A stretch of DNA of 64,000 bases from positions 57,164,001 through 57,228,000 of the forward strand of contig OZ287755.1 in assembly GCA_965649765.1 (NCBI GenBank). Direction: 5' to 3'. Positions within the stretch are counted from its first letter, which is position 1. Every line of letters begins with the position of its first letter. Origin of the DNA: Bispira polyomma. Taxonomy: Eukaryota. The translations under genes and the position numbers were made by a program. Positions 20,106 through 59,800 of this stretch are shown in pieces. A model generated the notes under the pieces. The model saw only the letters and a program-made list of their open reading frames with translations, was not told where the DNA came from and did not search any database.

Positions 20106-20720
20106 ACAGTGCCCCGGGGTACCAAAGATATGAATTAAGTTATATGGACATAACAATTAAAGTGTAACACCATAAAAGACTTGCGGTCAAATTTATTTAG
20201 GTCTACGGTTTTTTATATAGTTTCGGCCAATAAGGAGGGGGGCGTAAGGTCACCTTAAAGTCTGCTAGCTTGAACGAAGGTGTGTAAGGTCACCCTAAAC
20301 CAAAGAAGAATGAGGGTGCCGTATGGTCACCTTAACTTTAAGTTTAAGAATTGCTAAAGGTGCCATGAGGTCACCTTAAATTAATTACTAAGAGTTGAGG
20401 TCAGACAACGCTGACCTTAAATTAGTTTGAATGTTGAAATAAAGGTCAGACAATGCTGACCTTAAGTTTTAGTTAGGTAGGTCTCCTGTAAGGTGACCCT
20501 ACCTTGAGTTTGAGATAATTGTAGATTTTGAGGGTATACCATAAAGTATGTAATAAGTTCAAGCTAGACTAAGACTGTAAAAGAGTGCATTATGCACCCA
20601 GCAGTTAGGTTGACCTTATGCCCCCGGACAGTCATTGCTCTGCACTGTCCACATTTAGACTTTATTATGTATTAATACATATTTTATTATATTTACAGCT
20701 GAGACATAAAGAGCAGTCCA
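20106..20720 (-). repeat. B2 direct repeat of element 2 (copy of B1, 21530-22166)
   Basis: Near-identical ~615/637-bp copies; B1 has a small extra insertion near 21965. Confidence 0.95.
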
Positions 20721-26780: not shown

Positions 26781-27210
26781 ATTGTTACAAAATAATGTTC
26801 CGTGGTCGGCTGTAGTTTTCAAAAGGAAGTTATATTCAGACCGCACAGCTTTGTATAGGGAGAGCCGCAGTCAGTGACGCGTTTACAAAAACAAATAGAC
26901 TGTTACCCCAGCACTGAAAGTACCAACGCTGGGGGCGCTGCCTTATACTTGGTGTCATCTAATCCACGAATACGGTAGGAGAGACCTTTTATTCTACCTG
27001 GGTTGGTGTTTCTCATCACAGCTCCTGCAGTTTCCACATCATCAAAGAACAGAGACTTCCGCTAAAGGTAGAACTGCTCTACACACAGATACCTTCTTTT
27101 TCCATCTAGAAAAGGGCTTGGATGGTGTTTACTTAAAACACTGTCTTGTCCAAAGAAGAAGGTTTAGTTGCACTGTGGATTGTATCTTTCCCCCTTCATT
27201 GTCCACCGCT

Positions 27211-27461
27211 GGGGCCGCGGTGGCCTAGTGGTTAGCAAGCATTGCGCTTCACAATCACTGGTCTCTCACCTCTGGGCGGCGTGAGTTCGAATCCCATCGA
27301 TGCCTATGTGGGAAAGGTGGTAGTTCCTTACTGTGGGCCACTTGTTTCTCTGCAGAACCTTGACCGACTGTATGCAGTGTTTCCTCCAGCGTTTCCAACT
27401 ACCTGTCCCAATATAACCTACTAAAAGGTACTAGAGTGGACATTAAATATCCAAATTCAAA
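27211..27461 (+). mobile_element. tRNA-derived SINE, family A, copy 2 (inserted in LINE ORF1 just upstream of NADAR)
   Basis: A and B boxes; 15-bp TSD TTCATTGTCCACCGC at 27195-27209 and 27462-27476. Confidence 0.95.
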
Positions 27462-28759
27462 TTCATTGTCCACCGCAAAAGTTCTGGTACAGTATCTAAA
27501 TCCTGTGCTTTGTATGAAGTTCCATCAAGGACAAGTTTATCCACTTCAGTGAACATTTCTGGATCTTTGAATCTATCTTTGCTGCTTTCAGGATTGAAGG
27601 CAACACTTTCCTGTTCTGCCTCAAAGCCTCTGTATAATCTTCCTGTACTTTGAAATTTCTGTCTTTTAGGTCCCAGCTTGATTTCCAGACCTTGTCTCCT
27701 TGTTAGGGAAGTGTTGAAAATGAACAATTACTGTTCTAGGATGGGTGGAAGCATGTGGTAACATGTGAGATAAAGTCCCTATCCTATGAACTCTTAAAAA
27801 CTGAATCTGAGAAGCATTTGCCATGTTTAACTTGTTCTGTCAAAATTCAGTAACTTTAGTCTCTATATCTTCCTTTGGTGATTCAGCAATACCATCAAAA
27901 AACAAATTGTCTTTTTTGCTGAAGGCATCTTAACTATTTATTTCTTCTTTCAGTTTGCTGATTGTCATATCTTGTTCTTTCTTTTTATGTTCAAAAGTTT
28001 TTTTTCAAGTTTGTTCACATTTTATTTCTTGTTTCACGACCTTAACAGATGTTGTTTCTTTTCTAATTGCACTTAGTTCATTAATGATACATGAGAATGC
28101 CTGCATGAACCATTCTGGAGCTAAATCTTGTATTTGTTTTACCAGTTCATTTCTATCACCTTGTAATGCCTCATCCTTGCTAAGTGAAGGTTTGTATCCA
28201 TTTTTTTCAAACCTAAATTATCACTAAGTGGTGAGACCTAAGGTTCCTCAGCTCCTCTTTTACTCATATCCAGTCTATTTGGCCTATAACTATCCTTTAA
28301 AATATCATTAAAACACACAGGAATAGTTAGTTTATTTTTAGTGCAATCCACAAAACTTTGACATAAAATTACAACCAGCAATCAGTCATAATATCTATTC
28401 ATTCAGTAAACACACTTAATGACCCCTAGGTTTATTATCTGATGTTCATCCCTTTTTTACATCACATAAGGAAATTAACAATCTTAAAGTTGAACTATAA
28501 ACTTATACAATAATTTACAGAGTCTAATAGTCAAACCAAAATTGAGATCGCTTAACTTAACCAGTCAATTAGAACTCTCCAGTAAGTTTTAATTTGTATC
28601 TGGATTACTAACATGACAAGGCTTGTGTCCTCGATTCTTGTTTGTTTTAAAAGTGTGGTAAAATATATGAGCAATGTGTAGGAATGGTCAAAACCCCTTT
28701 AGGGCTCCATACTAATACAAAGCAATTAACTCTGTGTCTGACCCAAGTAGAATTTAAAT

Positions 28760-36259: not shown

Positions 36260-37605
36260 TACGAAATTAAATATCTTAATCGTTTTCGTTTGTAACTGAC
36301 ATTTAACAAAGTCCCAAAGGATATTCTTATCTTCCATAACAACATGTTTTTTAATTTCCTGTTTAACAATATCTGTGTTATTCTCATCTTGAAGGAGCGT
36401 ATTATTAAATTTCCAGGACCAAGGTCCCCTTTTTGAGAGTTTAATATGTCAATATTTAAATTGATTAAGCAGTAGTCTGACCTATTACTGGGCTTGATTG
36501 TGCATTTTGTGACCAGATAGTTCATATATTTACAGATCAACCAATAATCCAGTCTTGACTGAACTGAACCTCCTCTACATTTTTCACATCATGTGAACTG
36601 CATTTCATCATGATTTCGTAACCACCATATATCTACTATGCATAATTTATCCATTAGCATTTGTTTCGTATCTTGAGAAGTAATTACTTTCACGCCGCCT
36701 TTCTTGTCTAATTTGTTATTCAACTAAGTATTGAAATCACCACCTATAATCAAATTACTTGCACTATAATTTTCAAGAATTTTCTGAAGTCCTGTCATAA
36801 AGTTGATTTAATCTTTTAAACAATCCTTTGTATGTGCATAAATGTTCACTAGAATGAGTGGTATGTTTTCTATTTCACAGGATGTATGTTTCTGTTATTA
36901 ATTTAAAATCAAAGTTGAAGTTTTCTGGGATTATTTAAGCCACCCCTTACTCTGAGTTGACCCATTTGAAAAATAAATGTTGTCCCCCATTCTTTTTTCA
37001 ATTTAACTTCATCTTCAAGATAACTATGAGTTTCCTGTAAAAAGGTAATACCTACATGTGACCCTTTCAGCCAGCTAAAAATGTTTTCCCTTTTCTTTTT
37101 ATCCCGTAGCCTCCTGCAGTTGAAGGAGTTAATAGTAACAATTTTAAGAGTCATTTATACTTCATCCTAACCAATAAGACTTTCTATTTTCCTTATGTAA
37201 CAAGCTTCATACATCTATAAAATCTCACTGAGAAATAACAAGGAAGAGTACTGTACATATGACACAGACACAAAACTACATTAAACCATACAAAAGTTTT
37301 AGGAATTTATACATTAGCTAATATACATTGTAAAGATTTAATATACTAATATATGCTGAAAAAAAACTATAAATATGATTTTTGAGCTAGATTCCTAGAT
37401 GTTATCTGGATAGCTGGAGAGTTGGAAGTCTGTATATATAATAATGTTTAGACCTATAGTCTTTTCAGATCCAGCATTTCTAAAGCAGCTTGTTATAGCA
37501 TTTTTTATAATGGATCATAACAATTTTTTTTCATTAATTCACAGCTCCTTAATATGCTCTTTTATTTTTCTAATAACACACTTTTCAAATATGGGGCTAG
37601 TATAC
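36260..37605 (-). pseudogene. Duplicate of the EN fragment of the old LINE; ORF1/NADAR absent in this copy
   Basis: MTLKIVTINSFNCRRLRDKKKRENIFSWLKGSHVGITFLQETHS, GGDFN, SRLDYW, SD; collinear with 18630-19940. Confidence 0.85.
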
Positions 37606-40600
37606 ATGTATTAGACAATCAGTTGTAATAAAACAATTACAATGTACTAGATCCTGGGATCAGTATAATACTGATTATTGAGCACTTTGCAGCATATAAG
37701 GTTATGGATAAAATAATTACTTGAGCACTTTGTAGCATATTAAGTTATGGATAAAATAATACTGGCACACATAAAAGAACAACCAAACCAACATTTGTGA
37801 CAGACCTATGATTGTGATGCTAACACGTTTAACCACTAGGCCACCATCACACCTCTATTCAAAGTAAAAGTAAATAGTGGGGTAGATGACTAGGATTCTT
37901 TGTCATGGGTCCTACTTCCAGTTTTAGGAACCTTGAGGAACCTAAAAATGCTCTTTCTCAAGTGTCAGTAATCTGTAAGTCGACTGCCAATTACCAATAC
38001 AGATTGACTGTACTTGTCCAGTGAAGACAGGTTTACTGAGTTTAATGGAGATAAATGAGAAATTGTACCTAATTAGAAAGATAATACAGCACTGATACCT
38101 TCTTAGGTCACAATAGTAATTAACAATACATAGACAGTTTAAGATATAGATATAGAACAGTATGGAAGATATGGAAGCGTGTTGTATAAAAAGATACTTT
38201 GGGAACCTTGATAAATGTTCATCATCCAACCATTTTAGTCCAGAGGTTGTTGGTGACTGTACTTGTGTAGACAAGACAAAGTTAATTAGTACTTTGAGTG
38301 GAAGCAATAAGGAGATACTGTGGTGAACATATTTTTTTTAAAAAACAACATTAAGTAAGTAGCTTTATGAAATTAAATATCCTGACAAATATGATAAAAA
38401 ATGTATAAATTAAGTTTCCCCTTTACCTTGCCAGAATCTTCATCTAAAGTACATGTGGGGTAAGTTGTGTGTTACACAATTGGGAACTAAACTACAATAT
38501 GCGTGTTACACAATTGGGAACTAATCCACAATGTGCTCTACCTAAATGGTCAGTTTTGTCTTTCTTTTACTTCATTTCATGCACAACCAAAGACTGTAAA
38601 GGTTGATGTGATGTTTTATTGGTCGAAGAACAAGATTAGGGGTAGTTGTTCCAGAAAGCAATCAGAAAAAAATGAAATGAACATGAACTCAGAGTTACCA
38701 TAACGCAGATTCAACCACATCTACCCATCGAATCCAACTCACACACACATACAAACACACAGCCAACCAAACATCTACCCATCCGCACACACTTCCTTAC
38801 CTGGATGATGACACATAATACTTTTATTCTTTCTCGACCATTGACATGATATTTCCTTTCAATTATTGTTTTTCTTCATCTGCCCGCGTGAAGGCTCCTT
38901 TTGCTACATAAAATGTTTTCATTTTTGAAATGATACAGCAGTCTTATTAAATTGTCGTCAATGTCATGAGTTACTCCTTGTTCAAAGCTTATGTAATATT
39001 GTTGGCTCTTAACAGTAGGAACCGGTTAATTAAATTAAATTTAATCTATAGTGTCACTTTACCATTGCATAACTAAGGCCAAAAATGGCAAGATTGTATC
39101 TGAAAATAACAAACAATTTGATAACAGTGTCATTTCAGAAAATTGTGGTAATTTTTTTTCTTTACAACACATGTCAGAGATTTTAAAGTTTTTTTTAACC
39201 ATTTCACAGAGGTTTCATTTTGGCCCTTGTCTGATTCTTTGTTTCTTTGTCACCAGCAGCCGTATTATGGAAAAAACTTCAAAATCAGACTCAACTAAAT
39301 TTGCTATACTCGAGCACATTTTTACTCAAGCTTGGCTGATATAAATACATGCTTAAACATGCAATGCTTATCTAATTGTCTTCAAAACATGGTTTGATCT
39401 TGCTAACTTTGGTTAATTACATTGATTTTTCTTATATGTCGATACACTATTAGTCTATTACAATTAATCATGCTATTTCAGATCTGGAAAGGTTAAAATT
39501 GTGCCCCAGATGTTTGTGTTGGGACCACTCACTATATATTGTCTCTGTATACCACACCCCTCAGTAAAATTATTTTCCTCCTAGTTATTTAAAGTATCAT
39601 GTCTATGCTGAAACACACATATGTATGTTCATTTTACCCTAAGCACATAAGCGGGTGCCTTTGAACAAATTCAGGAATACTTTATAGATGTTCAGAACAG
39701 GATGACCTGAAACAGAGGCTAAAGCTGAACCCATTTAAGACTGAATTTATTAAGCTTTACTGCTCAGCGTGCAGAACTATTCTTGGTACATTACTCTGAT
39801 AAACACACATTCTAGATTCTAGATGGTAGCCATCACCTCGGTTCAATTATAGAATGATAGGAGTAACGTGTAATGGTGGTCCTCTGTCTTAAGGGTGGCA
39901 AACACCAATGGGAAGCTAAAGAATGTTAATAAATAGTAATCCTCAAACCCCCCCCCCCCACCCCACCCCCCCCCCCCCGCCCTGTCTTAAGTCTTAATTG
40001 ATGACAATACTAGTTACTGCCTTCAGAAACCAAAGTGAAATGACATACTTCACTGGGCATATGTTTGACTAAGTGTTCATTCTCATATACGGGGCTTGCG
40101 ACATCCGACGCACGATTTGCGATTGCGACATCCGACGTGGGTATTCTCATGTGAGCGACACAGGGTGGTACATTTAGATCCAGATCGCAGCAATATGTAT
40201 AGAGGAATACATATTGAAGGAAAAAATGGCGGACAAAAGCAAGGCCTTATTATGTGCTAATGAGGAAATTAACGGAATGCTTGCATTGATGATGCTTTAT
40301 ATTAAATGCAAACATAAAAAAAAGCAGGCCAAGAAACTTAGATTCTGGGTACACAATATTATTAAAGGAAGAAAGCAATTTGGAGTCTACCATCACCTTG
40401 TAAGTGAGCTCAGACTGGATGAAGTTCAGTTCAAAGCATATTTTAGGTAAATATTAACTGCATTTCATTTTTTTTTTTTGTATAAAATGTTGTGGTATAT
40501 AACAAATACAGTAAACAAGTCATATCACCGGTGATCATATCACCTAGCAACTACATGGTTGATGTACTATACAACACGTAATAAAACACCAACTAATCTC

Positions 40601-40887
40601 CAAACACTTATGGTTATGACTAAAGTCACAAGATTTACCGATGTACTGAGGCTTTTACTTCAATGTGGCTTCTGTTAAAATACTGCATACACATGTACAG
40701 GAGAGTTGTCAGCCTTTGTAGTTCAGGGTAATTGAGCCTATCAACAAATAACACACAAAATCTCTCTTCGGTAGCAATTAAATTCTATGCGTTTTACTTT
40801 ACAATCTCACTATACATTTATACATATGAGCAGGTCTTGGTTTATGCTGTTCTAAATGAAGTGTTTTAAAAATCTACCAAGAAATAA

Positions 40888-42171
40888 AGTGCAGTCCCAG
40901 CAAGGACCTCTAAACAGGATTACAACCTTGTCTCCCCCGTATCTCAAAAACTCTCATTATTAGATCTGCGTGCAGCTTTAAAGCAAGAACTAGTCCCTCT
41001 GCGTTCAGAAATTGATGGTATTAAACTGAAACTTGATATAGTAGAAAAAATATTAAGCGGTGACATTGAGGATGTAAAAAATTGCATTCTTAAGGTTACT
41101 GAAAGACTTGATTCTGTGAATGATTCCTTCAAAGCTAAGATAGAATTTCTTGAAGAAGAAAATAAGGATCTCCACATGAAACAGATACAGGCTACCACTA
41201 ACATAAATGAACTGACAAATAGACTGATAAATCTTGAGTACCACATGAGGCGAGATAACTTAAAATTTTTAAATATAAATCTTCCCAACTCAACACCCCA
41301 TCATCCAGAAGACTGTGAGTCAATCATCCTTCACATATGCCAAGACCATGGAATTGTCCTAGAAAGAAGGGACATTGTCAGAGCTCATCGTGTTGGTCCT
41401 ACTGCTAACAACAAGAGGGCTATCATAGTGAAGCTTAACCATTTCAAGGATAAGATGAAAATTCTCAAATTAAAAAGTGCTTTTCGTGAAAATGGAATAC
41501 AAATAGTTGAGGACTATCCACCAGAAGTTGTTAGTCGCCGAAAGACCTTCAGATCAGTCCTTCAAACTGCCTTTGCGTCCAATGGAAAATATAAGGCAAA
41601 GTTAGAATTTGACAAGCTTGTTTTAAATGGAAGACATTACAGTGTTGATGAACTTGACAAACTCCCCGTAGACCTTCAGCCGCAATATTTAGCAACTGTT
41701 TCCAAAAACAACATCACTGCCTTTTTCACAGACCAGTCACCACGGTCAAATCATCACCCTCGCAAATTTGAAGTTCAAAATCAACAATTCTCATCAGTAG
41801 AACAGTTTTTCATGTATCAGAAGGCCTCTCACTTTCATGATGACAGCACAGCTAATGACATACTGCGTAGCTCAGACCCAAAAAGAGCGAAGTTCCTTGG
41901 AAAACATGTCAACAATTTTGACATGTCCACATGGCTGCCGGTATGTGACAAATACATGAAAACTGGCCTCACAGCAAAATTTGACCAAAATCCTCAGCTA
42001 GCAAAGTTTCTGAAGGACACCGGATCTACACATATTGTGGAAGCCAATCCATACGACCTATATTGGGGTGCAGGCCTTTCCTTGACCAATGAAGACATTT
42101 GGCACATCCCAAGGTGGAAAGGTAAAAATACCCTTGGTTTACTGTTAGAAGAACTACGTAAAAATATGTGA
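40888..42171 (+). CDS. L1 ORF1p (coiled coil, RRM, CTD) fused to a C-terminal NADAR/YbiA-like domain (~41716-42168)
   Basis: Frame open from ~40888. LEYHMRRDNLKF, IVRAHRVG, AIIVKL and EDYPPEV are L1 ORF1p motifs. These are followed by FF....SNHHP, SVEQFFMYQKA, PKRAKFLGKHV, AKFDQNPQL, VEANPYDLYWGAG and GKNTLGLLLEELR (NADAR motifs). Start codon not resolved. Confidence 0.9.
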   Translation, partial: SAVPARTSKQDYNLVSPVSQKLSLLDLRAALKQELVPLRSEIDGIKLKLDIVEKILSGDIEDVKNCILKVTERLDSVNDSFKAKIEFLEEENKDLHMKQIQATTNINELTNRLINLEYHMRRDNLKFLNINLPNSTPHHPEDCESIILHICQDHGIVLERRDIVRAHRVGPTANNKRAIIVKLNHFKDKMKILKLKSAFRENGIQIVEDYPPEVVSRRKTFRSVLQTAFASNGKYKAKLEFDKLVLNGRHYSVDELDKLPVDLQPQYLATVSKNNITAFFTDQSPRSNHHPRKFEVQNQQFSSVEQFFMYQKASHFHDDSTANDILRSSDPKRAKFLGKHVNNFDMSTWLPVCDKYMKTGLTAKFDQNPQLAKFLKDTGSTHIVEANPYDLYWGAGLSLTNEDIWHIPRWKGKNTLGLLLEELRKNM

Positions 42172-42179
42172 GTGCTAAT

Positions 42180-43020
42180 TTTATTAGCTAGTGCTGTTAT
42201 AAACATTATACTGGTAATATAGTGCTAATTCAAACATTTTACTGACAATATAGTGCTAGTACAAACTTTTTACTGACTATGTAGTGCTTCTATAAACATT
42301 TCTTTGACTAATGTTGCGCAAATATTTTATTGTCTATTGCTTACCTAAAACCCCTTGTACTTGTAAACTTATTAAGTGGACAAAATATGTTCTTTTGTTG
42401 ATTATCTATTACTCATAGCCTTTGTGCATACTACAAACAAAATTAATTCATAGTATTCTTATGGAGCAGTTATGTTTTTTTACTCAATGAATTGTGTATA
42501 TATTTTACAATAATTATGATTATTGACACTAATTTTTTAGTTACTTTTTTGGACCAACAATTTATATGAGATGACATTTATCTGTGATGTTAATCAGTAA
42601 TAGAATACTGCATGTTTTGGGGGTTTTCTAAAAACTACTATAAGCTTAAGTAGATATTACTTAATGAAGTATATACTTCAACAGAGTATTGTAACCTTAT
42701 TCAGTAATTGTTTAGCTAACATAGCTGATCCTTGATCCCAGCTATTCTATAGGTAGCTCAACCAGTATGACCTGCTATATGTTTCATTTATGTTTGCTTT
42801 TTTTGTACAGTTTTGTTCTAGTTTGTTTAAAACCTACTTCTTATTCTCCATTTGTATGTATATTCTTTGATATATTTTCTCTGTTTAAAAGGAGTTACAA
42901 CATGTTCTTCATTTCAATACCTCACATTATCAGTAATAATGTTCAGTTCTTCATTTCAGTAACTCACACTAGCAGTAATAATGTTCAGTTCTTCATTTCA
43001 ATACCCCACAATTGCAGTGG
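42180..43020 (+). repeat. Short tandem repeats in the inter-ORF spacer
   Basis: ~30-bp unit TAGTGCT..AAACATT..ACTG about 4 times (42185-42310); ~42-bp unit GTTCTTCATTTCA..CACA..CAGTAATAATGTTCA about 3 times (42900-43020). Confidence 0.7.
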
Positions 43021-43082
43021 TAATATTAATAATTCTTTCTTTACAGAAAGCAGATATGGAGCTCTTACGTGTTTAAGTAAAA

Positions 43083-46000
43083 ATGGTATTGGATAACATA
43101 ATTAGGGTATCATCAGCAAATGTTCAGGGTATCAGGAATAAAGAAAAGAGGCATGATGTAATAAGTTACTTAATGAACAGTAATACCAATATCCTCTGTC
43201 TACAGGATACACATTTGTTACCTTCAGACAAAAAATATCTCAAGTCATCATTTGACTTTGAATTTTTTTTGCATGGTACTAAGACCAATTCTCGTGGGGT
43301 TTTAGTAGCTTTTAAAAACAATTTTGAATATAAAATAAAACATGTAGAAAATGACACAGATGGAAATCTGCTTTTAATAGACATACAACTGAACAGTATG
43401 TCAGTAAGATTAATAAATATTTATGCACCAAATAATGATAGCCCTGAATTCTTTCATAAAATAAGAGACTATGTTGTAGATTCAACTGAAACTTATATTT
43501 TGCTATGTGGTGATTTTAATTTGGTCCTGAACCCAATATTAGACAGCTATAACTATGTTAACATCAATAACCCACAATCAAGGACAGCCATATTAGAGCT
43601 AATGTCAACTCACAATTTAAATGATGCTTTTAGACAATTAAACCCAGTCACTAAAAGATATACTTGGCGTCGACGTAACCCGATTAAACAAGCACGATTA
43701 GATTATTTCATTGTTTTAAATACCCTAACTGATATAGTTCACAGTTGTGTTATCAAACCTGGTTATAGGAGTGACCACTCTGTTCTAGATATTAACATTA
43801 TTATTGATAAATTTGAAAGAGGTAAGGGAATATGGCGTCTCAATTGTAGTCACTTGAAAAATTCTAATTACATTGATACAATAAATGGAGCAATTAATGA
43901 AGTGAAAATTCAGTATGCATTACCAATATACAATATAGAAAACATTAGCCTTGTAAATGACTCCGATATTCAATTTACTATTCCTGATAGTACTTTTTTA
44001 GAGATGTTACTTTTGAAAATTAGAGGTGAAACTATCAAGTTTTCTTCTCAGTTAAAGAAGAAGAATAACCTTAATGAAAACAAATTACAGCAAGAAATAG
44101 AATTTATTGAAAATAACAATGACCCCCAACAACATGATGTGCTCACAGGAAAGAAACATGAATTGGAAACTTTGAGAGAATTGAAAAATTCCGGTCACTT
44201 AATAAGGTCAAGAGTGCAAAATTTATTGTACAATGAAAAACCAACAAGATATTTTTGCACCTTAGAGAAAAAAAACTATGTTGACAAAACGATTAGAAAA
44301 CTTACTGCAGCTAATGGAGAGTTGATAACCTCTCAGAAAGAGATATTAAATCATGTGAAAGAGTTTTATGCCAACGTTTATCGCAACAGAGATAATTCAT
44401 TACAAGAAATAGATCTTGATAACCTGATTGCAAATAACCATGCAAATATTTTGACAAAAACTGAATCTGATTCAATAAATGGTTTGGTTACAATAGAAGA
44501 ATTAGGTAAAGCCCTTAAACAGATGAAAAACAATAACAATATAATGTTTTACAATATAATGGTTTACCAGCAGACTTCTATAAGGTTTTCTGGTGTAAAT
44601 TAAAATTCTTTATCTTACGTGCAATAAATGAGAGCTATGACAAGGAAATTATGCCTTTTAGTCTGCGACAAGTTGTAATAAATTGCATTCCAAAAGGAGA
44701 CAAATCCAGAGATCAATTAAAAAACTGGCGCCCAATATCATTGACAAGTGTTTGTATAAATTAGCAACTAGTGTTATAGCTTCAAGAATAAAATGAGTTT
44801 TGTCTAAGCTGATATCAACAACACAAACCGGTTTTATTGAGGGTAGATTTATTGGAGAAACAACTCGCCTAGTATATGATATAATGGAATACACAGAAAT
44901 TAATAATATAGATGGGTTATTGATGCTAATTGACTTTGAAAAGGCTTTTGATTCGATCTCGTGGAAATTTATGTATTTGGTTTTAAAAAAATTTGGTTTT
45001 GGTTACGATTTAATAAAATGGGTTAAACTATTTAACACTGAAATTAAAGCCTTTGTTCTTCAAGTAGGAGTACTTTTCAAATTTTTCAACATAGAAAGAG
45101 GCTGCAAACAAGGTGATCCTTTGGCACCTTATCTGTTCATACTATGTAGTCAAGTATTATATTTATTAATCCAACACGATTCTAAGATTAAAGGTATTAC
45201 CATAAAAGATCAAGAATTTAAAATAACCCAATTTGCTGATGATACCGCCTTAATGTTGGATGGTTCTGAGAGTTCCTTATCTGCTACTTTAAATGTTTTA
45301 GAAATATTTGGTACAATGTCAGGTTTAAAGATGAACACAACAAAATCAAAGATGATATGGATTGGAAGGAAAAAAACATTGTAGAGATAAACTGCATTCA
45401 AAATTTTATTTTGAGTGGAATTGTGAAACGTTTTCATTGCTTGGACTAGAGTTTGACATTGATTTAGGAAAGATACCTGACATTAATTATGCTAAAGCCC
45501 TAGCCAAGATTAAAAAATTGATATCAGCCTGGAATAAACGGACACTAACACCTCTTGGAAAAGTAACAGTTATAAAAACATTGATTTTATCAAAATTGGA
45601 TCATTTATTTATGGCTATCTCTCTACCAAATAGGGATTTCTATAAACACATAAATGCACTCCTTTATAACTTCATATGAGAAGGAAAACCAGAGAAAATA
45701 TCTCGTGTACAGATGAATCAAAAATATGTTGACGGTGGATTAAAAATGATAAATATTGAACATTTTGTAAAGGCCCTAAAGAGTACATGGATTAGAAGAC
45801 TGATTATATCACAAAATTCACAGTGGTCCAAACTTTTGAGTTGATACATTTGACCATTGCAAAGATTACCCATTTTGGTCATTACTGGTTGAAAATATTG
45901 ACATCAAGGACTCAAAATCATTTTTGGCAGGACATTTTCCAAATTGTTTCTTCTCATTCTCTAGACAGTACTTGTCAAAGTGCTCAGCATATCTTGCGAA

Positions 46001-46911
46001 CTCCAATATGGTACAATGAGACTATTAGTAAAACAAATCTCTTTAAGTCGAGATGGTATCAAAAAGGAATTACAGTTGTAGGAGACCTTGTACAGAATGG
46101 CAGTATGTTAAGTAAAGAGATGTTGGAGTCATTTTATAACCTTCCTGTCATTAATTTTATTGAATACTACCAAGTAAAAGCCGATCTGCTTCAGTTTATA
46201 AAGAAATCAAACGTGAATTTATCTTCTGATCTTGAAAGACCCTTTATTCCAGTACATTTATCAATACTGCTTAAAAGTAAAAAGGGTTGCAAAGATATAT
46301 ATAACGCTATGAATAAATCTTACGTAGAAAGCAAATACAAATTAAAATGGAATAAAGATGTAAATATGAATATTGATACTACCACTTGGAAAAGAATATT
46401 TTATATATGTTTCAACACTGTAAAAGATAATAAATTCATTTGGTATCAATATAAAATTTTGCATCGCATACTTGGAACAAGAAAACCTTTATTCAAAATG
46501 TCTATTTCTGAATCAGAGTCATGCAGATTGTGCAACTCTAACACTGAAACCCTGCTTCATTTGTTCACGCAATGCCAGCATGTAAAAAAAATATGGAAAG
46601 ACTTACAACTATGGATAAAAATGTCATTAAACACTGATCTGAATATTACCTCAGAAGAAATATTATTCGGTTACTTATTGAAAGATGCAATGTTCCTTCC
46701 AATTAATATCATATTCTTTGTAACCAAATACTATATCTACTCCTGTACCAGAAATAGCACATCTTTAAACTTTGATATCTTAAGAAAAAAACTTACATAT
46801 ATGTATGAATGTGAATATTATCTATATAAAGAGAACAATCAAGAAAATTTGTTTAATGAGGTATGGTCACGATTTTCTAATATGTTTGACTACAATCCAG
46901 TAAGTGATTAA
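43083..46911 (+). pseudogene. L1 ORF2: APE endonuclease, RT and C-terminal CCHC knuckle (disrupted)
   Basis: SANVQG, LQDTH, GDFN, SDH; LIDFEKAFD, QGDPL, QFADD; CRLC...ETLLHLFTQC. Frameshifts or stops near 44550, 44750-44795, 45370, 45677 and 45830. Confidence 0.95.
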
Positions 46912-48121
46912 CAGGTATGAAATGCAAAATTGACTGTTAAGATATGTGTAAGTTAACCATTATTGATAAGATAAATCATTCCATTTATATGTATAGCAAA
47001 TTACCTTGTTAACCATTGTGTTATTTGTAATGTATTTAAATATCAGAAATAAAGTGCAATTGTGGACAAATAATAATGGATACCAATAAATAGTTTTATT
47101 TAGATAATAAAATGTATGATTGCAACCTTCTAAATAGTTATTATGTTTGAAAATTACTTTAGAAAAATATGGTATTATTGTCAAAGTTGAACCATGCTGT
47201 GCATGATTTGCAAGGTAAATTTATTGTAGGAAAACATCTTTATTATGTGTTTTTTGCCTGACTGGTGTAAGAAAAGCTGCAAAGAAACTAAATCCTACAT
47301 GGGATTTAAATTTCATTCCACCTATAAATTTGGATATAGCTGTGTCTCTTTCGACCTTTTTTATAAATGTCTTTGTGTCAAGTTATTGTACATACAAAAA
47401 AAAAGTTTTCTGTAATGACAGCGAGCATATGTTTTAAATCTCCAGTGAACTTGTTGTATTATTATGGTGAAAGATCTTACAAAGATTCCTTTATTTTAAA
47501 TTAACCAGAGAACAGTTTGACAGGTGTTGTACCAAAAAGAAGGTACTATTGCAAAGATCAGTCTCACAAGAGAAAGTATTTCTCCAAAGGAAAGGTTGGC
47601 AATATGTTTAAGGTAGATATACTCTGACATTTTTTTCAGTAATTACCAAATGCTGACAAATAAATTGTTCACAACAATACAAAATAAATGCAATTTATTG
47701 CAGGTTTACAAACTGATGTCAATTTGAATGTAAATGTAGCGAAAATTTTGTATATTTCATTGATTATTATTCAGTCTCATGGCATACATACAACCATTCA
47801 TAACTATTTTGTATATCTTGATACAAAGGTGAAACTACAGTTGAAAATAAACCTTTATTTTATTGCAAAGAACATGTAAAAAACAATTAAAAAGGCACAA
47901 ATGAAAAAAAAAACACAAAAAAATCCAGATAAATCTTTGCAGAATGATTTCTTTAAATTGTTTTTTGTATGACTCCTCCAATTAGCAGAGCAGGTCGGTG
48001 CTAAGTTGAATTACGCCTTTCAAGAACCAATTTTGTTAGGCCAGTACTTCAAAATAGTACTTCTATATTAGGTAACAAATGCTATGGATATAGGATATTC
48101 GACTTGTGGTAACAAAGTTTT

Positions 48122-50752
48122 TTATTGTAAGGATGTCATGGTATTGGTGAACAAAGATCCTGTCTCACCTAAACTTATACTTGTGGGGTGTGTGGGAGAA
48201 ACAGATATGCTTTGGTTACCAAAGCTGGGGAATACTGAGAGATTTGTTCCAGAGGAAATGGCCATGTTACTGGTTTGAGCTTGCAGATTGTTGCTTTCAA
48301 TAAAAGGAAGGTTGCTTGCTGTAGGGAAAAGAACAGTGGTGGCTGAAAATGGCAATTGTACTGTTTGAGGCATCTGAAAATTGAATGCCTCGGCATGGTT
48401 CTGGCCCATCTGTTGTTCTTGAATTTCGAGCACTTCAGTTTCTGCCTTGTAAAAAAATTTTGAATTTAAGATGTGAGGCTTTCCTTGGGGGCAACTTGCC
48501 CATACTTTTGGCATAACTAAGGAAGAGAAGTTCTTTTTCGCTCTTTTCTTCACACAAAGCTTGATCAACTTTGTGCCCCCTTCTCTTTTTGGAGCTGTAA
48601 TAGATCTGCAATCGCTTCGTCCATCACCTGCTTTGATGCACCTGCTTTATTTCGTATTTTTGGGGCCTTCCCTTCACTTGGAGTACTTGTTCTCCTCTTT
48701 GAGAGTATCCTTTTGGGTGTAGTGCCATCGCAAGGCTGTGTGGCATTAATTTGACTTAATATTGTGTTGTTTGCCTCACCATTAATTTCAATGGAATCTC
48801 TAAAAAAATAAATACACAAAATATACTTATTTTACCATTTGGACCATTTAATATAGTACATGCAGAGGTAGTATCAATTTATTTTTTTATTTTTATTCTT
48901 CCTAGTTTGTTTGATCTTTTACAGGGACCTTGCAACTGGAGAATCATATAAATCACTATATTTCAAATATAAATGGCAATTTCCAAATTGCATTGGCGCA
49001 TTGGATAGCAAACATGTAGTTATGAAAGCTCGAAGAAACAGTGGTTCCCTTTTACTTTAACTACAAGGGCACCATATCAATGGTGTTGATGGTCATGGCA
49101 GATGCCAATTTGAAATTCATTTACGTAGATATTGGGGGATTTGGCAGGAACAGTGATGGAGGAACATTTGCTGAATCAAATCTTGGAAAAGGACTGGCAT
49201 CAAACAGACTAAGAATTCCACCTGACACGGCCTTACCAGAAGCACCTGAATTTGGGAGATTGCCTTATACCATAGTTGCAGATGAGGCTTTCCCACTTAC
49301 TTACCACATGATGAGACCATACCCAGGCAAATCAAGTGGCCGAGCAGAAAGAGCGTTCAATTACCGCCTCTCCAGAGCTCGGAGAATCATTGAGTGCACA
49401 TTGGGAATTTTGGCTGCAACATGGCGCATTTACCACACAAAAATTGCCATTGCACCAGAAAGGTTAAAAGTTGTGGTCAAAGCAACACTTGTGTTACACA
49501 ATTTATTGCAGGTGGCCAGCACAGAAGTTACAGCACAGATGGAGGAAGAATAACAGGGAGAAACAGATATGCTACAAAATATCCAGCATACGGGGAACCG
49601 GGGTGCAAAAGATGCAATTGCAGTGAGAGATAAGATCAAAGATTATCTGAATGCTTACAAATTACCTTGGCAGGACAGCTATCTTGATCGGGGATTGAAT
49701 ATTTAATATTTGTATTCATACAAAATGACAATTGACACAGTACATGTAACTAATTTATTTTAATTATACATACGCTGACAATGTCTCCTCAGTGTTGACA
49801 GTTGGATCATCAGGGATTTCACTCAGGTCCTGACTTTCAGTGTCCAAGTTTTCAGATTCTTCCTTATCTAGTTGCAAGTTACATTCAGTGCTGAAACAAA
49901 AAGAAAAACTTTTTTGGTAAGGTATATTTTTATTGTCAAAATAATAAAAAAAATCTTTTTAATTGAGATGAATTTTTCATGATCTTTTTTAAGCATACCG
50001 AAACTTTTAGGTGATGTGTGCATGGCTATATTCAGAAGTACTCACTCTGCTTCTTCCATAAATGGCAACAGAAATTCTAGCATCTTGAAAAATGGCCATG
50101 TAATTGGCTTAGTAGTTGCCTGCCCACTCTTTTTGTTTTTTTGAGCTATGAGGTTCCTCTTGAAGGTGTCTCTGATATTCCTTTACTTCCATTTACAGGT
50201 CTCTGCTGAATAAATATACATCGGTTACATTTATCATTAAAAGATTATCATATGGACTCATGGAGTGGATAGCCCTTGTGTAATTTATAATTAGTGGATA
50301 CAAATTTATGATCCACTTTGTAAAGAAGAAACACACCATCAGAATTACAACCCAAAAATACAGTTTTTCTCATTTAATGTAAACTGATATAACATTGAAC
50401 ACCATAAAAAACACACATGTATAACTTTACATTTACCCAATTAAATGTGATAGAAAATGCTATACATAGGAATGTACTAAATAGGGGGGTTTTGAAACTC
50501 ACTTTTTACAACTACTAAAACACCAATTTTAGTCTTGTACTTATTACACAAGGCATAAGCATGGTAATGAACACAGTACTTACCTGGATATTCAAGGTTG
50601 TCGGCTATTTTTTGCCAAATGTTGTCACTTTTAGGCTTGTCCCTGTACTCTTTGGATGTAATATTATACAGTGATGGATTCTCGGGTACTAATATTATAA
50701 GCTGCTCAATTTTTATCTTTGAAAAGGTAGGTTTCTTGCCTGATTTTGACAT
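48122..50752 (-). pseudogene. Harbinger Myb/SANT-like (MADF) DNA-binding gene, 4 exons (50752-50584, 50205-50046, 49890-49774, 48799-48122)
   Basis: LIILVPENPSLYN..YRDK....IWQKIA, then CKWK*RNIRDTFKR..SGQ..WPFFKMLEFL, an acidic linker and a C-terminal region. Donors GTAAGT, GTGAGT, GTATGT with pyrimidine-AG acceptors; phases 1, 2, 2 are consistent. Confidence 0.85.
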
Positions 50753-58411: not shown

Positions 58412-59800
58412 CTAATCACTGATACTGTTTGTTTTCTCTGTCATTGATATACTACAAAAGAAGCTGCCGTCTGGATGTTCCCCAAACTCCGGACTGTGCG
58501 TGCAAGGCTCTGACTGATGCCTGACTATTTTAGGCAACTGCACTGTATGGTTCACCTTTCTGAAAGAAACCCCTGTAATGTCTACAGATGAACGTCTTCT
58601 GAGGTAAGAATCTACCTCCCTCCTCACCAGTTGACTGCGAAAGACATAGAGGCAAGGATTGAAAATGCAGCTGGTCAGCGCGACATGAATCGCACTGGTA
58701 CCCATCCAATCCTGTATGAGCTCTGGGTTTGAGACCTTAATTGTCAGCACAAAGAAAAACGGAATCCAGCTCAATGTAAAGGTGGATACACAGAGAAATC
58801 CAGTGATGGCAGCTTTAAAGTCATCCTTATGCAGCATGGGATTTCTCTTTAAACTAGTTAATTTTAGTTTGTGATAGACTTTTTCAGCAAGTGTAGGATA
58901 ATAGGCTGTGAAAGATCTTTTTTCTGAACAGGGGCTCAATCGTATGAGCAGCTGTTTGGGTTGATCAGGATTGAGGCTGTTCCGACGGGCATTTGCTGTG
59001 GTTCTTTTGGCTGCACCAAAGATCTTTAGGTACACCACCAACATACACCCCAAAGGCACGATAAAGAATACGACAGAGAAGAGATACACATACACTCTAG
59101 TAAACAGATCAGTCTGGTTCAAGTCCACCAAACATATACTCAACTGCTGGTCATAATCAATATGTCGAGTGAAAAGTAAAAGTGAAAAGCTTAAGCACAG
59201 GGCCCACATAAACACTATGCACTTGTATGTCTTTTTCGTAGTCAGTGAACGGGAGTACCTCAACGGCCTAGCAATGGCCTGGTATCGATCCATGGATATA
59301 AAGAGCAACGTCATCGAGGACACACAAATGAGTGACGTCACAACACAGCCGGTGACGTCACAGAACAGTTTCCCGCCGAAGTCCCACTGACGTTTAAGTG
59401 CCCCGTTGAGTAGCATTGGCCCAGTCACCAGTGTCAGAATGAAGTTACACACGGCCAAGTGTAGCACCAGTTTGTTGGAGACGGAGAGCAAGACTGGCCG
59501 AGTGGAGAATATTACAAATACAACCAGGTTTGACACTAGGCTGGCTAATAGTAGCAAAGATGTGAGGGTGAGTTTGAAGGCAGTCACAGAGGTCACCGGC
59601 ATCACAGAGGTCACACCGGGCGTCTGCTGGGTGATCGTGTTCATGCTGTCTGTGTTTTCTAGGATATCCCCAAACTGGTGAGTTTCTTCCGTGCCCAGCA
59701 TGGTATCAACCTCAGTTCCTGCATCGTCGACTGAGAGTCGTAAGTAATAATGCTCCAAATCTAAACCCTCCATTTTTTTGAGTTTGCAACAATCACACAT
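58412..59800 (-). CDS. Intronless class A (rhodopsin-like) GPCR, orphan GPR161-like
   Basis: 462-aa intact ORF with seven hydrophobic segments, TM1 SN, ICL1/TM2 LLSVSNKLVLHLAVCN (resembles GPR161 LLTLSNKFVFSLTLSN, Asn at 2.50), WxFG..C, DRY, SWIPFF, NPCLY. Start could be Met1 or Met10. Confidence 0.88.
   Translation of the reverse strand: MCDCCKLKKMEGLDLEHYYLRLSVDDAGTEVDTMLGTEETHQFGDILENTDSMNTITQQTPGVTSVMPVTSVTAFKLTLTSLLLLASLVSNLVVFVIFSTRPVLLSVSNKLVLHLAVCNFILTLVTGPMLLNGALKRQWDFGGKLFCDVTGCVVTSLICVSSMTLLFISMDRYQAIARPLRYSRSLTTKKTYKCIVFMWALCLSFSLLLFTRHIDYDQQLSICLVDLNQTDLFTRVYVYLFSVVFFIVPLGCMLVVYLKIFGAAKRTTANARRNSLNPDQPKQLLIRLSPCSEKRSFTAYYPTLAEKVYHKLKLTSLKRNPMLHKDDFKAAITGFLCVSTFTLSWIPFFFVLTIKVSNPELIQDWMGTSAIHVALTSCIFNPCLYVFRSQLVRREVDSYLRRRSSVDITGVSFRKVNHTVQLPKIVRHQSEPCTHSPEFGEHPDGSFFCSISMTEKTNSISD

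What the first reader, a model, noticed from the sequence alone, without database searches (positions are those of the whole stretch)
40888..42171. L1/Tx1 retrotransposon ORF1p carrying a C-terminal NADAR (ADP-ribose / N-glycosidase) enzyme domain
Seen: one continuous frame joins a typical L1 ORF1p (coiled coil, RRM, CTD) to a complete ~150-aa domain with the NADAR/YbiA motifs (SN.HP, EQ..MYQKA, K..G..V, KF.QN, VEA.P.D..WG, G.N.LG..L...R). This part is still open although ORF2 has several lesions. Established: NADARs are YbiA-like N-glycosidases; the NADAR antitoxin of DarT1 removes ADP-ribose from guanine in DNA; NADARs also occur in phages and some nidoviruses; guanine-ADP-ribosylating enzymes exist in animals (pierisin, clam CARP-1). 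The ORF1 accessory domains I know are esterase, PHD and zinc knuckles, and I do not know a description of NADAR on L1 ORF1p. Inference: the RNP may carry many copies of a de-ADP-ribosylase that protects element RNA or cDNA from host ADP-ribosylation, i.e. a transposon-encoded counter-defence.
Basis: partly seen in the sequence, partly recalled or inferred. Interest (0 to 1): 0.92.

Follow-up and report, generated by a model that had tools for sequence, protein, structure and literature searches.

The report
LINE ORF1 protein fused to NADAR
This is a dead, 5'-truncated copy of a jumping gene (an L1-type LINE) whose RNA-coating protein ends in an intact NADAR enzyme domain, a fusion shared by a large, old and recently active clade of such elements. 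It was already noted in passing for oyster elements, so its interest lies in the untested idea that retrotransposons carry their own eraser of ADP-ribose marks on nucleic acids.

Summary
Frame 40888-42171 (+) is open for 427 codons. It encodes an L1-type ORF1p (coiled coil, RRM, CTD) joined to a complete YbiA-type NADAR domain (Pfam PF08719, E=2.7e-38). The fold matches NADAR-ADP-ribose (8bau) and human L1 ORF1p (2ykp). All five ADP-ribose-site and catalytic residues are present.

The window copy is a relic. It spans 40894-47044, has a 14-bp target-site duplication, lacks the ATG and about 17 codons, and its ORF2 is broken by at least 4 frameshifts. Its open ORF1 is no evidence of selection on this copy.

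The fusion is clade-wide:
- about 1,945 NADAR candidates in this 1.04-Gb genome;
- every locus read shows ORF1 sequence upstream of the NADAR, and all 20 read further show EN-RT downstream;
- at least 11 families, some with copies 99-100% alike;
- 77 of the best 150 public NADAR clusters carry the ORF1 module;
- ORF2 relatives at 33% identity keep the fusion.

The domain is under purifying selection (pN/pS 0.36, P=9e-5), as strong as on the RRM-CTD.

The fusion is not new. A 2025 Genome Biology paper mentions NADAR on oyster Tx1 ORF1 proteins, and this scan noted the fusion at least five times elsewhere in this genome. The counter-defence function is plausible but untested. I found no host guanine ADP-ribosyltransferase, and no RNA data are on record.

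The parts
40880..40893 (+). 5' copy of the 14-bp target-site duplication (AGAAATAAAGTGCA)
   Evidence: Exact 14-mer repeated at 47045-47058. Expected by chance about 1e-3 or less. It abuts the point where similarity to sibling copies begins.
40894..47044 (+). 5'-truncated, decayed L1-superfamily LINE copy (6.15 kb)
   Evidence: Siblings L002-L004 and L016 align from about 40890 onward at 88-98% identity. L003 and L016 continue upstream, and L016 shows an ATG there. A TSD flanks the copy.
40894..42171 (+). ORF1 remnant, open to its stop, encoding ORF1p-NADAR without start codon
   Evidence: Intact relatives are 425-443 aa and start with Met.
40957..41247 (+). Coiled-coil region (protein residues 24-120)
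   Evidence: Single long helix in the AlphaFold2 model. The three-copy model gives an in-register parallel trimer, ipSAE 0.69 against a best control of 0.00.
41257..41691 (+). RRM (residues 124-208) and CTD (residues 212-268) of L1-type ORF1p
   Evidence: Profile hit to human LINE-1 ORF1p 2ykp at E=1.7e-13. Foldseek 2ykp E=2.6e-6, target TM 0.69.
41716..42168 (+). NADAR (YbiA-type) domain, residues 277-427; E305, K312, E385, D390, W393
   Evidence: Pfam PF08719 E=2.7e-38. 8bau E=5.6e-36 and 2b3w E=1.2e-26 by profile. Foldseek target TM 0.75-0.76. Residue mapping.
42172..43082 (+). Non-coding, T-rich inter-ORF spacer (911 nt)
   Evidence: Stops in all three frames and no similarity to the spacers of other families. 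The 20 loci read have spacers of 0.6-1.5 kb.
43083..46911 (+). Broken ORF2: AP-endonuclease (about 43113-43778), RT (about 44806-45357), zf-RVT (about 46363-46596)
   Evidence: Pfam Exo_endo_phos, RVT_1 and zf-RVT. At least 4 frameshifts and about 4 in-frame stops relative to an intact relative.
46912..47044 (+). 3' UTR, ending without a poly(A) tail
   Evidence: Sequence read. A young family in the same genome ends in about 23 A.
47045..47058 (+). 3' copy of the target-site duplication

Best explanation
The window holds a 5'-truncated, dead-on-arrival copy of an L1-superfamily LINE. It belongs to an old, diverse and recently active clade whose ORF1 protein is a fusion: a trimerising coiled coil, an RRM and a CTD as in L1 ORF1p, followed by a catalytically intact YbiA-type NADAR domain. 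Those points are shown. The following is inferred. ORF1p trimers coat the element's RNA in cis, so the particle carries many NADAR active sites next to the RNA template and the nascent single-stranded cDNA. Characterised NADARs cut ADP-ribose from guanine N2 (and cytosine) in ssDNA and RNA, and the same residues are kept here. The domain therefore most likely strips base-linked ADP-ribose from the element's own RNA or cDNA, keeping them readable by the reverse transcriptase. That would protect against a host or microbial nucleic-acid ADP-ribosyltransferase. Fusion to ORF1p would supply the nucleic-acid affinity that free NADARs lack. I put the identity and evolutionary part at about 0.95 and the functional part at about 0.4. 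The overall figure reflects the functional claim.
For: Identity: Pfam NADAR E=2.7e-38. Profile hits to 8bau, 2b3w and human L1 ORF1p. AlphaFold2 pLDDT 90.4 with Foldseek matches to the same three structures. Trimer model ipSAE 0.69 against a best control of 0.00, runs agreeing in at least 92% of contacts, partner pLDDT at least 82. That mark was reached by 21 of 30 proteins solved as pairs and 0 of 23 solved as single chains, and the pass may come from memory of 2ykp. Active site: E305, K312, E385, D390 and W393 correspond to E43, K50, E125, D130 and W133 of the ADP-ribose-bound NADAR. They are invariant in 28 of 28 copies from about 14 families, and kept in 22-27 of 27 homologues at 25-50% identity. 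Clade-wide fusion: 1,945 candidates in this genome, with all 150 scored at E<=3e-38. All 49 loci read show ORF1 sequence upstream of the NADAR, 43 of them reaching the RRM/CTD or further. All 20 long loci have EN-RT ORF2 downstream, several in frames over 1,000 aa. Distant ORF1 and ORF2 homologues from other assemblies keep the architecture. 77 of the best 150 NADAR representatives carry the ORF1 module. Selection: independent within-family pairs give pN/pS 0.36 for NADAR (P=9e-5) against 0.49 for RRM-CTD. Between families, codon-position distances are 0.36, 0.28 and 0.62. Biochemistry and precedent: NADARs reverse guanine ADP-ribosylation on DNA and RNA but not phosphate-end ADP-ribosylation (PMC11543638, PMC11833690). 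Phage orphan NADARs neutralise DarT1 (PMC11825919). A conjugative-element polyvalent ArdC protein carries NADAR (P0177). An oyster nidovirus encodes NADAR plus Macro domains (PMC12377751). CARP-1 guanine ADP-ribosyltransferases occur mainly in bivalves (PMC12945103).
Against: No enzymatic data exist for any LINE NADAR. No ADP-ribosylation-based restriction of retroelements is known in animals. Searches of this genome with Pfam Enterotoxin_a, ADPrib_exo_Tox and DarT found nothing. Only three ARTC-type frames (PF01129) of unknown substrate turned up on C14. These searches are insensitive, and I had no CARP-1 or pierisin sequence to query with. No RNA run is on record, so expression is unshown. 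The residue equivalent to R93 of 8bau varies (C, S or R). A nematode NADAR protein acts in RNA processing with no defence context (PMC9303266).
Confidence: 0.45

Rival explanations
1. The NADAR domain has an RNA-processing or housekeeping role in the life of the element's RNA rather than a defensive one. Examples are removal of an NAD- or ADP-ribose-derived group made during RNA maturation, or another N-glycosidic cleavage. The Ectocarpus paper suggested this, and de Souza and Aravind suggested it for RNA viruses.
For: PMC12477816 proposes processing of transposition RNA intermediates. The nematode protein SNA-3 needs its NADAR residues for spliced-leader trans-splicing. The catalytic residues are conserved and selected, which fits any catalytic role.
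Against: No such substrate is known for any NADAR. [quoted passage not shown] Most LINE clades manage without the domain, which argues against a core RNA-maturation need.
Confidence: 0.25
2. The domain antagonises protein ADP-ribosylation, for example PARP-type antiviral factors acting on ORF1p, ORF2p or host proteins. This would parallel the viral macrodomains of coronaviruses and alphaviruses.
For: By analogy only. RNA viruses carry ADP-ribosyl hydrolases, and the oyster nidovirus has both Macro and NADAR domains.
Against: Every NADAR activity reported in the papers read here is on base-linked ADP-ribose. I saw no report of activity on protein-linked ADP-ribose, which is handled by macrodomains and ARH enzymes. 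I did not check whether NADARs have been tested on protein substrates.
Confidence: 0.1
3. The domain is a non-catalytic reader or binding module, for example for ADP-ribose, NAD or N2-modified guanosine. It would target or regulate the particle.
For: NADAR binds ADP-ribose tightly enough to co-crystallise (8bau).
Against: All catalytic residues are invariant across about 14 families and nearly so down to 25% identity. Pure binding modules usually lose their catalytic residues.
Confidence: 0.07
4. The fusion is a neutral passenger or a chimeric accident of this one copy, or an assembly or gene-prediction artefact.
For: The window copy itself is dead and shows no sign of selection in place.
Against: The same architecture appears at every locus read (ORF1 remnants upstream of NADAR at all 49, EN-RT downstream at all 20 long ones), in at least 11 families and in other assemblies. 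pN/pS is 0.36.
Confidence: 0.01

Closest known systems
Tx1 LINE families of Crassostrea gigas in Repbase, whose ORF1 proteins carry YbiA-family NADAR domains (noted in PMC12477816, Genome Biol 2025)
   Same: A LINE of the L1/Tx1 group with a NADAR domain on ORF1p. This is almost certainly the same clade of elements.
   Different: The paper gives one sentence and a supplementary figure, with no account of copy number, selection, catalytic residues, distribution or the ORF1p fold.
Human and mouse LINE-1 ORF1p (type II ORF1p; PDB 2ykp, 2ldy, 2w7a)
   Same: Coiled coil, RRM and CTD in the same order, a predicted parallel trimer, and a gene upstream of an EN-RT ORF2.
   Different: 18-20% identity in the structural alignments. 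The Pfam L1 models miss it. It carries an extra 150-aa enzyme domain after the CTD, and the inter-ORF spacer is 0.6-1.5 kb rather than tens of bases.
YbiA-type NADAR hydrolases (E. coli YbiA 2b3w; Phytophthora NADAR 8bau)
   Same: Same fold. Glu, Lys, Glu, Asp and Trp of the ADP-ribose site are all kept, including the YbiA-type Glu at the E125 position.
   Different: It is fused to an RNA-binding protein of a retrotransposon. The R93 equivalent is not conserved. Activity is untested.
Phage AdfN and other orphan NADARs that neutralise DarT1 (PMC11825919); DarG1 antitoxins
   Same: A mobile element carries a NADAR without a cognate toxin, presumably to clean its own nucleic acid.
   Different: Those act in bacteria against a known DarT1. 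DarT1-associated NADARs use Asp in place of the YbiA-type Glu and a conserved extra Lys. No DarT was found in this genome.
Ectocarpus Gypsy LTR retrotransposons with NADAR at the N-terminus of Pol (PMC12477816)
   Same: A retrotransposon-borne YbiA-type NADAR.
   Different: A different element class, a different host protein (Pol rather than the Gag-like ORF1p), and an independent acquisition with bacterial nearest hits.
Other accessory domains on LINE ORF1 (esterase, PHD, zinc knuckles)
   Same: Modular addition of a domain to the nucleic-acid-binding ORF1 protein.
   Different: Different enzyme chemistry. That these are the known accessory domains rests on my own knowledge of the literature and was not checked here.

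Membership tests
L1-type (type II) ORF1p | N-terminal coiled coil that forms a parallel trimer | tested here: met
   Continuous helix at residues 24-120. The three-copy model is in register with a heptad pattern, ipSAE 0.69 against a best control of 0.00. The mark was reached by 21 of 30 solved pairs and 0 of 23 single chains, and the pass may reflect memory of 2ykp. This is a model, not a measurement.
L1-type (type II) ORF1p | RRM followed by CTD, homologous to L1 ORF1p | tested here: met
   The profile of 27 homologues hits 2ykp at E=1.7e-13 and 2ldy at 2.2e-8. Foldseek 2ykp target TM 0.69. The Pfam Transposase_22 model misses the single sequence and reaches only E=0.0019 on relative P0038.
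L1-type (type II) ORF1p | Encoded upstream of an AP-endonuclease/RT ORF2 in the same element | tested here: met
   True in the window, in 20 of 20 long loci and in distant loci L031-L033 and L066-L069.
L1-type (type II) ORF1p | [quoted passage not shown] | not testable with these tools
   Needs biochemistry.
NADAR superfamily, YbiA subfamily (PF08719) | Sequence model above the curated cut-off | tested here: met
   132.2 bits against 35.1, covering profile positions 11-161 of 163.
NADAR superfamily, YbiA subfamily (PF08719) | NADAR fold | tested here: met
   pLDDT 94-98 over the domain. Foldseek 8bau E=6e-11 at target TM 0.75, and 2b3w at TM 0.76.
NADAR superfamily, YbiA subfamily (PF08719) | ADP-ribose-site residues Glu43, Lys50, Glu125 (YbiA-type Glu), Asp130 and Trp133 in 8bau numbering | tested here: met
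   They correspond to E305, K312, E385, D390 and W393. Invariant in 28 of 28 copies from this genome.
NADAR superfamily, YbiA subfamily (PF08719) | Hydrolysis of guanine- or cytosine-linked ADP-ribose, or N-glycosidase activity | not testable with these tools
   Needs an enzyme assay.
DarTG1-type antitoxin or anti-DarT NADAR | A cognate or targeted DarT1 ADP-ribosyltransferase in the same system or host | tested here: not met
   No ART gene in the element. Pfam DarT PF14487 found nothing in the genome, though that search is insensitive.
DarTG1-type antitoxin or anti-DarT NADAR | Asp at the position of E. coli C7 D171 instead of the YbiA-type Glu | tested here: not met
   The position holds Glu (E385), as in YbiA-type NADARs. 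The conserved extra Lys (K115) was not mapped.
LINE, L1 superfamily (L1/Tx1 group) | ORF2 with AP-endonuclease, reverse transcriptase and a C-terminal zf-RVT | tested here: met
   Pfam Exo_endo_phos, RVT_1 and zf-RVT. The RT of an intact relative hits human L1 ORF2p and R2 at about 1e-18.
LINE, L1 superfamily (L1/Tx1 group) | Target-primed insertion marks: target-site duplication, 5' truncation, 3' tail | tested here: met
   14-bp TSD and 5' truncation relative to siblings. The window copy has no poly(A), but a young family ends in about 23 A.
LINE, L1 superfamily (L1/Tx1 group) | Placement in Tx1 rather than L1 proper, by RT phylogeny or target-site specificity | not tested
   No reference Tx1 or L1 RT sequences could be brought in. 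120 ORF2 homologues carried no clade names. No target specificity is evident from the few flanks read.

The most novel reading that the evidence does not exclude
The particles of a whole clade of invertebrate LINEs carry a working nucleic-acid de-ADP-ribosylase because their hosts mark retroelement RNA or cDNA with ADP-ribose on guanine or cytosine, possibly through CARP-1-type enzymes. That would be an animal genome-defence pathway nobody has described. It would also mean that many of the 'metazoan NADARs' discussed in the ADP-ribosylation literature are transposon proteins rather than host genes.
Probability: 0.25. Interest if true: 0.85.

Novelty: new member of a known kind. Interest (0 to 1): 0.58.

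Why it matters
NADAR is the only hydrolase family known to remove ADP-ribose from guanine and cytosine bases. Its role in animals is an open question in the ADP-ribosylation field, which currently treats metazoan NADARs as host protection against microbial genotoxins (PMC11125620, PMC12945103).

Here the NADAR sequences of one animal genome that most resemble the query are overwhelmingly LINE ORF1 fusions. All 49 loci read carry ORF1 sequence upstream, out of about 1,945 candidates. About half of the best-scoring public NADAR clusters carry the same ORF1 module. The domain is as constrained as the RNA-binding core and keeps every catalytic residue, so the elements need it.

That gives a concrete, testable system with thousands of natural variants. 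Two questions follow: whether animals ADP-ribosylate nucleic acids of genomic parasites, and whether retrotransposons counter it as T4-like phages do. If the domain instead serves RNA processing, it would be a new step in LINE biology. The window copy itself is ordinary junk; the value lies in the clade.

Tried and rejected
- Pfam L1 ORF1 models on the N-terminal 283 aa found no hit even at E=10. A family profile and the fold settled the identity instead.
- A word-based search with the NADAR domain alone returned only 3 hits, all likely ORF1 fragments.
- ORF2 naming failed. 120 homologues carried no clade names, and the PDB search hits L1 ORF2p and R2 equally. Tx1 against L1 is unresolved.
- Host ADP-ribosyltransferases: PF01375, PF03496 and PF14487 gave nothing, and the tool warns that this does not show absence. 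PF01129 gave 3 frames on C14.
- Polinton PolB-NADAR fusion (a lead from earlier notes): the 12 best PolB loci (L054-L065) show no NADAR by a LINE-derived HMM or by Pfam. The lead is neither confirmed nor refuted.
- Expression: no RNA run is on record and only 3 contig-level runs exist, so I did not use read laying.
- Between-family dN/dS: synonymous sites are saturated. I used codon-position distances and independent within-family pairs instead.
- The inter-ORF spacer has no ORF and no conservation across families.
- Supplementary text of PMC12477816 holds no oyster Tx1 sequences.
- Selection on the window copy's own ORF1 is rejected. The copy is 5'-truncated with no ATG, and its intact frame is compatible with chance.
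Full report
**What is in the window**

The frame 40888-42171 on the + strand is open for 427 codons. At 35% G+C that has a chance of about 2e-14.

- Pfam finds a near-complete NADAR domain at residues 284-426. It covers profile positions 11-161 of 163, at E=2.7e-38 and 132 bits against a cut-off of 35.1.
- The first 283 residues match no Pfam L1 ORF1 model, even at E=10.
- I aligned the protein with 26 homologues at 25-50% identity that share its whole length (A1). A profile of that alignment hits the ADP-ribose-bound Phytophthora NADAR 8bau (5.6e-36), E. coli YbiA 2b3w (1.2e-26) and human LINE-1 ORF1p 2ykp (1.7e-13, over the end of the coiled coil, the RRM and the CTD).
- The AlphaFold2 model has mean pLDDT 90.4. 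It shows one long helix (24-120), an RRM (124-208), a CTD (212-268) and the NADAR fold (276-426).
- Foldseek returns 8bau (target TM 0.75), 2b3w (0.76) and the human ORF1p trimer chains (0.63-0.69) as the only strong hits.
- A three-copy model of residues 20-272 gives an in-register parallel coiled coil with ipSAE 0.69 against a best control of 0.00. The runs agree in at least 92% of contacts and the partner pLDDT is at least 82. The mark was reached by 21 of 30 proteins solved as pairs and 0 of 23 solved as single chains. The pass may come from memory of 2ykp, so it shows likeness only.

**The active site**

The Mol Cell 2023 paper defines the ADP-ribose contacts of 8bau as E43, K50, R93, E125, D130 and W133. 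It shows that the equivalents of E43, K50 and the E125 position are needed for guanine de-ADP-ribosylation (PMC11543638).

In the pairwise alignment these correspond to E305, K312, C353, E385, D390 and W393 of the window protein. The Glu at 385 is the YbiA-subfamily signature.

- In 28 full-length copies from about 14 families of this genome, E305, K312, E385, D390 and W393 are invariant.
- In the 27-sequence alignment they are kept in 22-27 rows.
- Only the R93 equivalent varies.

**This copy is a relic**

- Siblings L003 and L016 continue upstream of about 40890, and L016 shows a proper ATG there. The window sequence diverges at that point.
- An exact 14-mer (AGAAATAAAGTGCA) lies at 40880-40893 and again at 47045-47058.
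- The copy therefore spans 40894-47044, has a 14-bp target-site duplication, and lacks its 5' UTR, ATG and about 17 codons. It was dead on arrival.
- ORF2 (43083-46911) carries AP-endonuclease, RT and zf-RVT. It runs through frames 3-2-1-2-1 with about 4 in-frame stops.
- At that lesion rate, an intact 1.28-kb ORF1 has a Poisson probability of about 0.05-0.26. The open frame is no evidence of selection on this copy.
- The 911-nt spacer is non-coding and not conserved between families.
- There is no poly(A) tail.

**The fusion is a property of a whole clade**

- The NADAR domain finds 1,945 first-look candidates in the 1.035-Gb genome. All 150 that were scored have E<=3e-38 at 45-100% identity, and about 50 sit in open frames of 400-480 aa.
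- All 49 loci I could read show homology to the ORF1 part of the window protein upstream of the NADAR, in the same or a shifted frame. In 43 of them it reaches the RRM/CTD or further.
- All 20 loci read over 7.4 kb have an EN-RT ORF2 0.6-1.5 kb downstream. Several ORF2 frames exceed 1,000 aa.
- The sample holds at least 11 families that are 60% identical or less in protein. Within families, copies are 96-100% identical.
- One such family has different flanks at each copy, poly(A) tails and a 3' UTR of about 50-nt tandem repeats, which indicates recent independent insertions.
- Outside this genome, the most distant ORF1 homologues (P0029, P0036) and ORF2 homologues at 33-39% identity all keep an ORF1-NADAR gene next to an intact EN-RT gene.
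- An exhaustive phmmer search of 1.84 billion representatives with the NADAR domain gives 11,205 hits at E<=1e-3. Of the best 150, 77 carry the ORF1 RRM/CTD module, 19 are multi-NADAR proteins and the rest are short or of other architectures.
- On a quick tree, 89 of 90 LINE NADARs fall in one subtree (SH-aLRT 86), and all families of this genome fall in one 22-row clade. Resolution is weak, so a single origin is compatible but not shown.
- The ESM Atlas lists look-alike clusters of 415-489 aa whose few taxon records are annelid.

**Selection**

Between families, synonymous sites are saturated. Eight independent within-family pairs give:

| Region | pN/pS | Binomial P |
|---|---|---|
| NADAR | 0.36 | 9e-5 |
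| RRM-CTD | 0.49 | 0.0035 |
| Coiled coil | 0.35 | 0.0035 |

Between families, mean distances at codon positions 1, 2 and 3 are 0.36, 0.28 and 0.62 for NADAR, and 0.38, 0.29 and 0.65 for RRM-CTD. The enzyme domain is as constrained as the RNA-binding core.

**Prior knowledge**

- PMC12477816 (Genome Biol 2025) reports NADAR on Ectocarpus Gypsy Pol. [quoted passage not shown]
- No other paper in the library links NADAR or DUF1768 with LINE ORF1.
- First readers of this scan noted the same fusion at least five times elsewhere in this genome.
- The fusion as such is therefore not new. The scale, the selection, the conserved active site and the ORF1p fold assignment do not seem to have been described.

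**How it most likely works**

Shown:
- ORF1p is L1-like and predicted to trimerise.
- The NADAR active site is intact and under selection.
- Characterised NADARs remove ADP-ribose from guanine N2 in DNA and RNA, and from cytosine, but not from RNA phosphate ends.

Inferred:
- Coating of the element RNA by ORF1p places many NADAR sites on the template and near the nascent cDNA.
- There they would remove base-linked ADP-ribose that would otherwise block reverse transcription or integration.

Precedents for mobile elements carrying NADAR against ADP-ribosylating defences:
- T4-like phage AdfN.
- A polyvalent ArdC-NADAR protein of a conjugative element found here (P0177).
- An oyster nidovirus that encodes NADAR plus Macro domains.
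- CARP-1-type guanine ADP-ribosyltransferases, which are reported mainly from bivalves.

Against the inference:
- I found no such enzyme in this genome with the Pfam models at hand. Only three ARTC-type frames turned up on C14.
- No RNA data exist.
- No animal ADP-ribosylation defence against retroelements is known.

I put the de-ADP-ribosylase, protective reading at about 0.4, a non-defensive RNA-processing role at about 0.25, and the rest lower.

**Limits**

- For that reason the Polinton PolB-NADAR lead from earlier notes could be checked only on 12 PolB loci, which show no NADAR.
- Tx1 against L1 placement is unresolved.

Noticed in passing
window 11681-15491, 18615-20139, 26906-27839, 36278-37133 (minus strand): Three or four further decayed LINE copies of the same superfamily. 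ORF1/NADAR remnants lie at about 14744-15491, 19875-20139 and 26906-27839. ORF2 remnants lie at 11681-13852, 18615-19480 and 36278-37133.
   Followed up: partly
window 49041-49553 (+) and 40214-40450 (+): A Harbinger/PIF transposase fragment (DDE_Tnp_4, E=6e-23) lies 2 kb downstream of the LINE. A short ORF whose sequence recalled, to my eye, the N-terminus of a Harbinger transposase (no Pfam hit; not otherwise checked) lies just upstream. The LINE may have inserted into a Harbinger element.
   Followed up: partly
window 58412-59800 (-): A single-exon rhodopsin-family GPCR gene (7tm_1, E=1e-40, 462 aa). This is the only clear host gene I saw in the window.
   Followed up: no
window 7859-9166 (+): A 435-aa ORF with a weak, sub-threshold RVT_1 match (25.6 bits). 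It is probably another retroelement remnant.
   Followed up: no
proteins P0086-P0102, P0124, P0138 (public data): Proteins with 2 to 7 or more tandem NADAR domains, up to 4,240 aa. One group (P0090, P0099, P0102, P0138) sits among the LINE NADARs on the tree. They may be host genes derived from LINE NADARs or gene-model artefacts.
   Followed up: partly
protein P0177 (public data): A 974-aa polyvalent protein with ArdC-N, a zincin peptidase, NADAR, DUF5710, Toprim and KfrB. Here NADAR is embedded in a conjugative-element anti-restriction protein.
   Followed up: partly
L051-L053 (G000 C1:1.33 Mb, C3:85.65 Mb, C5:80.76 Mb): A young family of at least 6.9 kb whose copies are 98.5-99.4% identical. 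It has a 5' UTR of at least 624 nt with a 109-nt direct repeat, a 3' UTR of about 50-nt tandem repeats and a poly(A) tail of about 23 A. One copy has an ORF2 frame of 1,305 codons.
   Followed up: partly
G000 C14:20789201-20920426: Three clustered open frames of about 375 aa matching the ARTC-type ADP-ribosyltransferase family PF01129 (best E=3e-9). Their substrate is unknown. They are the only candidate host ARTs found.
   Followed up: no
G000 PolB loci L054-L065 and unfetched long-frame PolB hits (e.g. C6:48955639, C8:57687376, C2:87510525): Protein-primed PolB genes (PF03175) are present. The 12 best loci carry no NADAR. The long-frame copies, where earlier notes report a PolB-NADAR fusion, could not be read.
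   Followed up: partly
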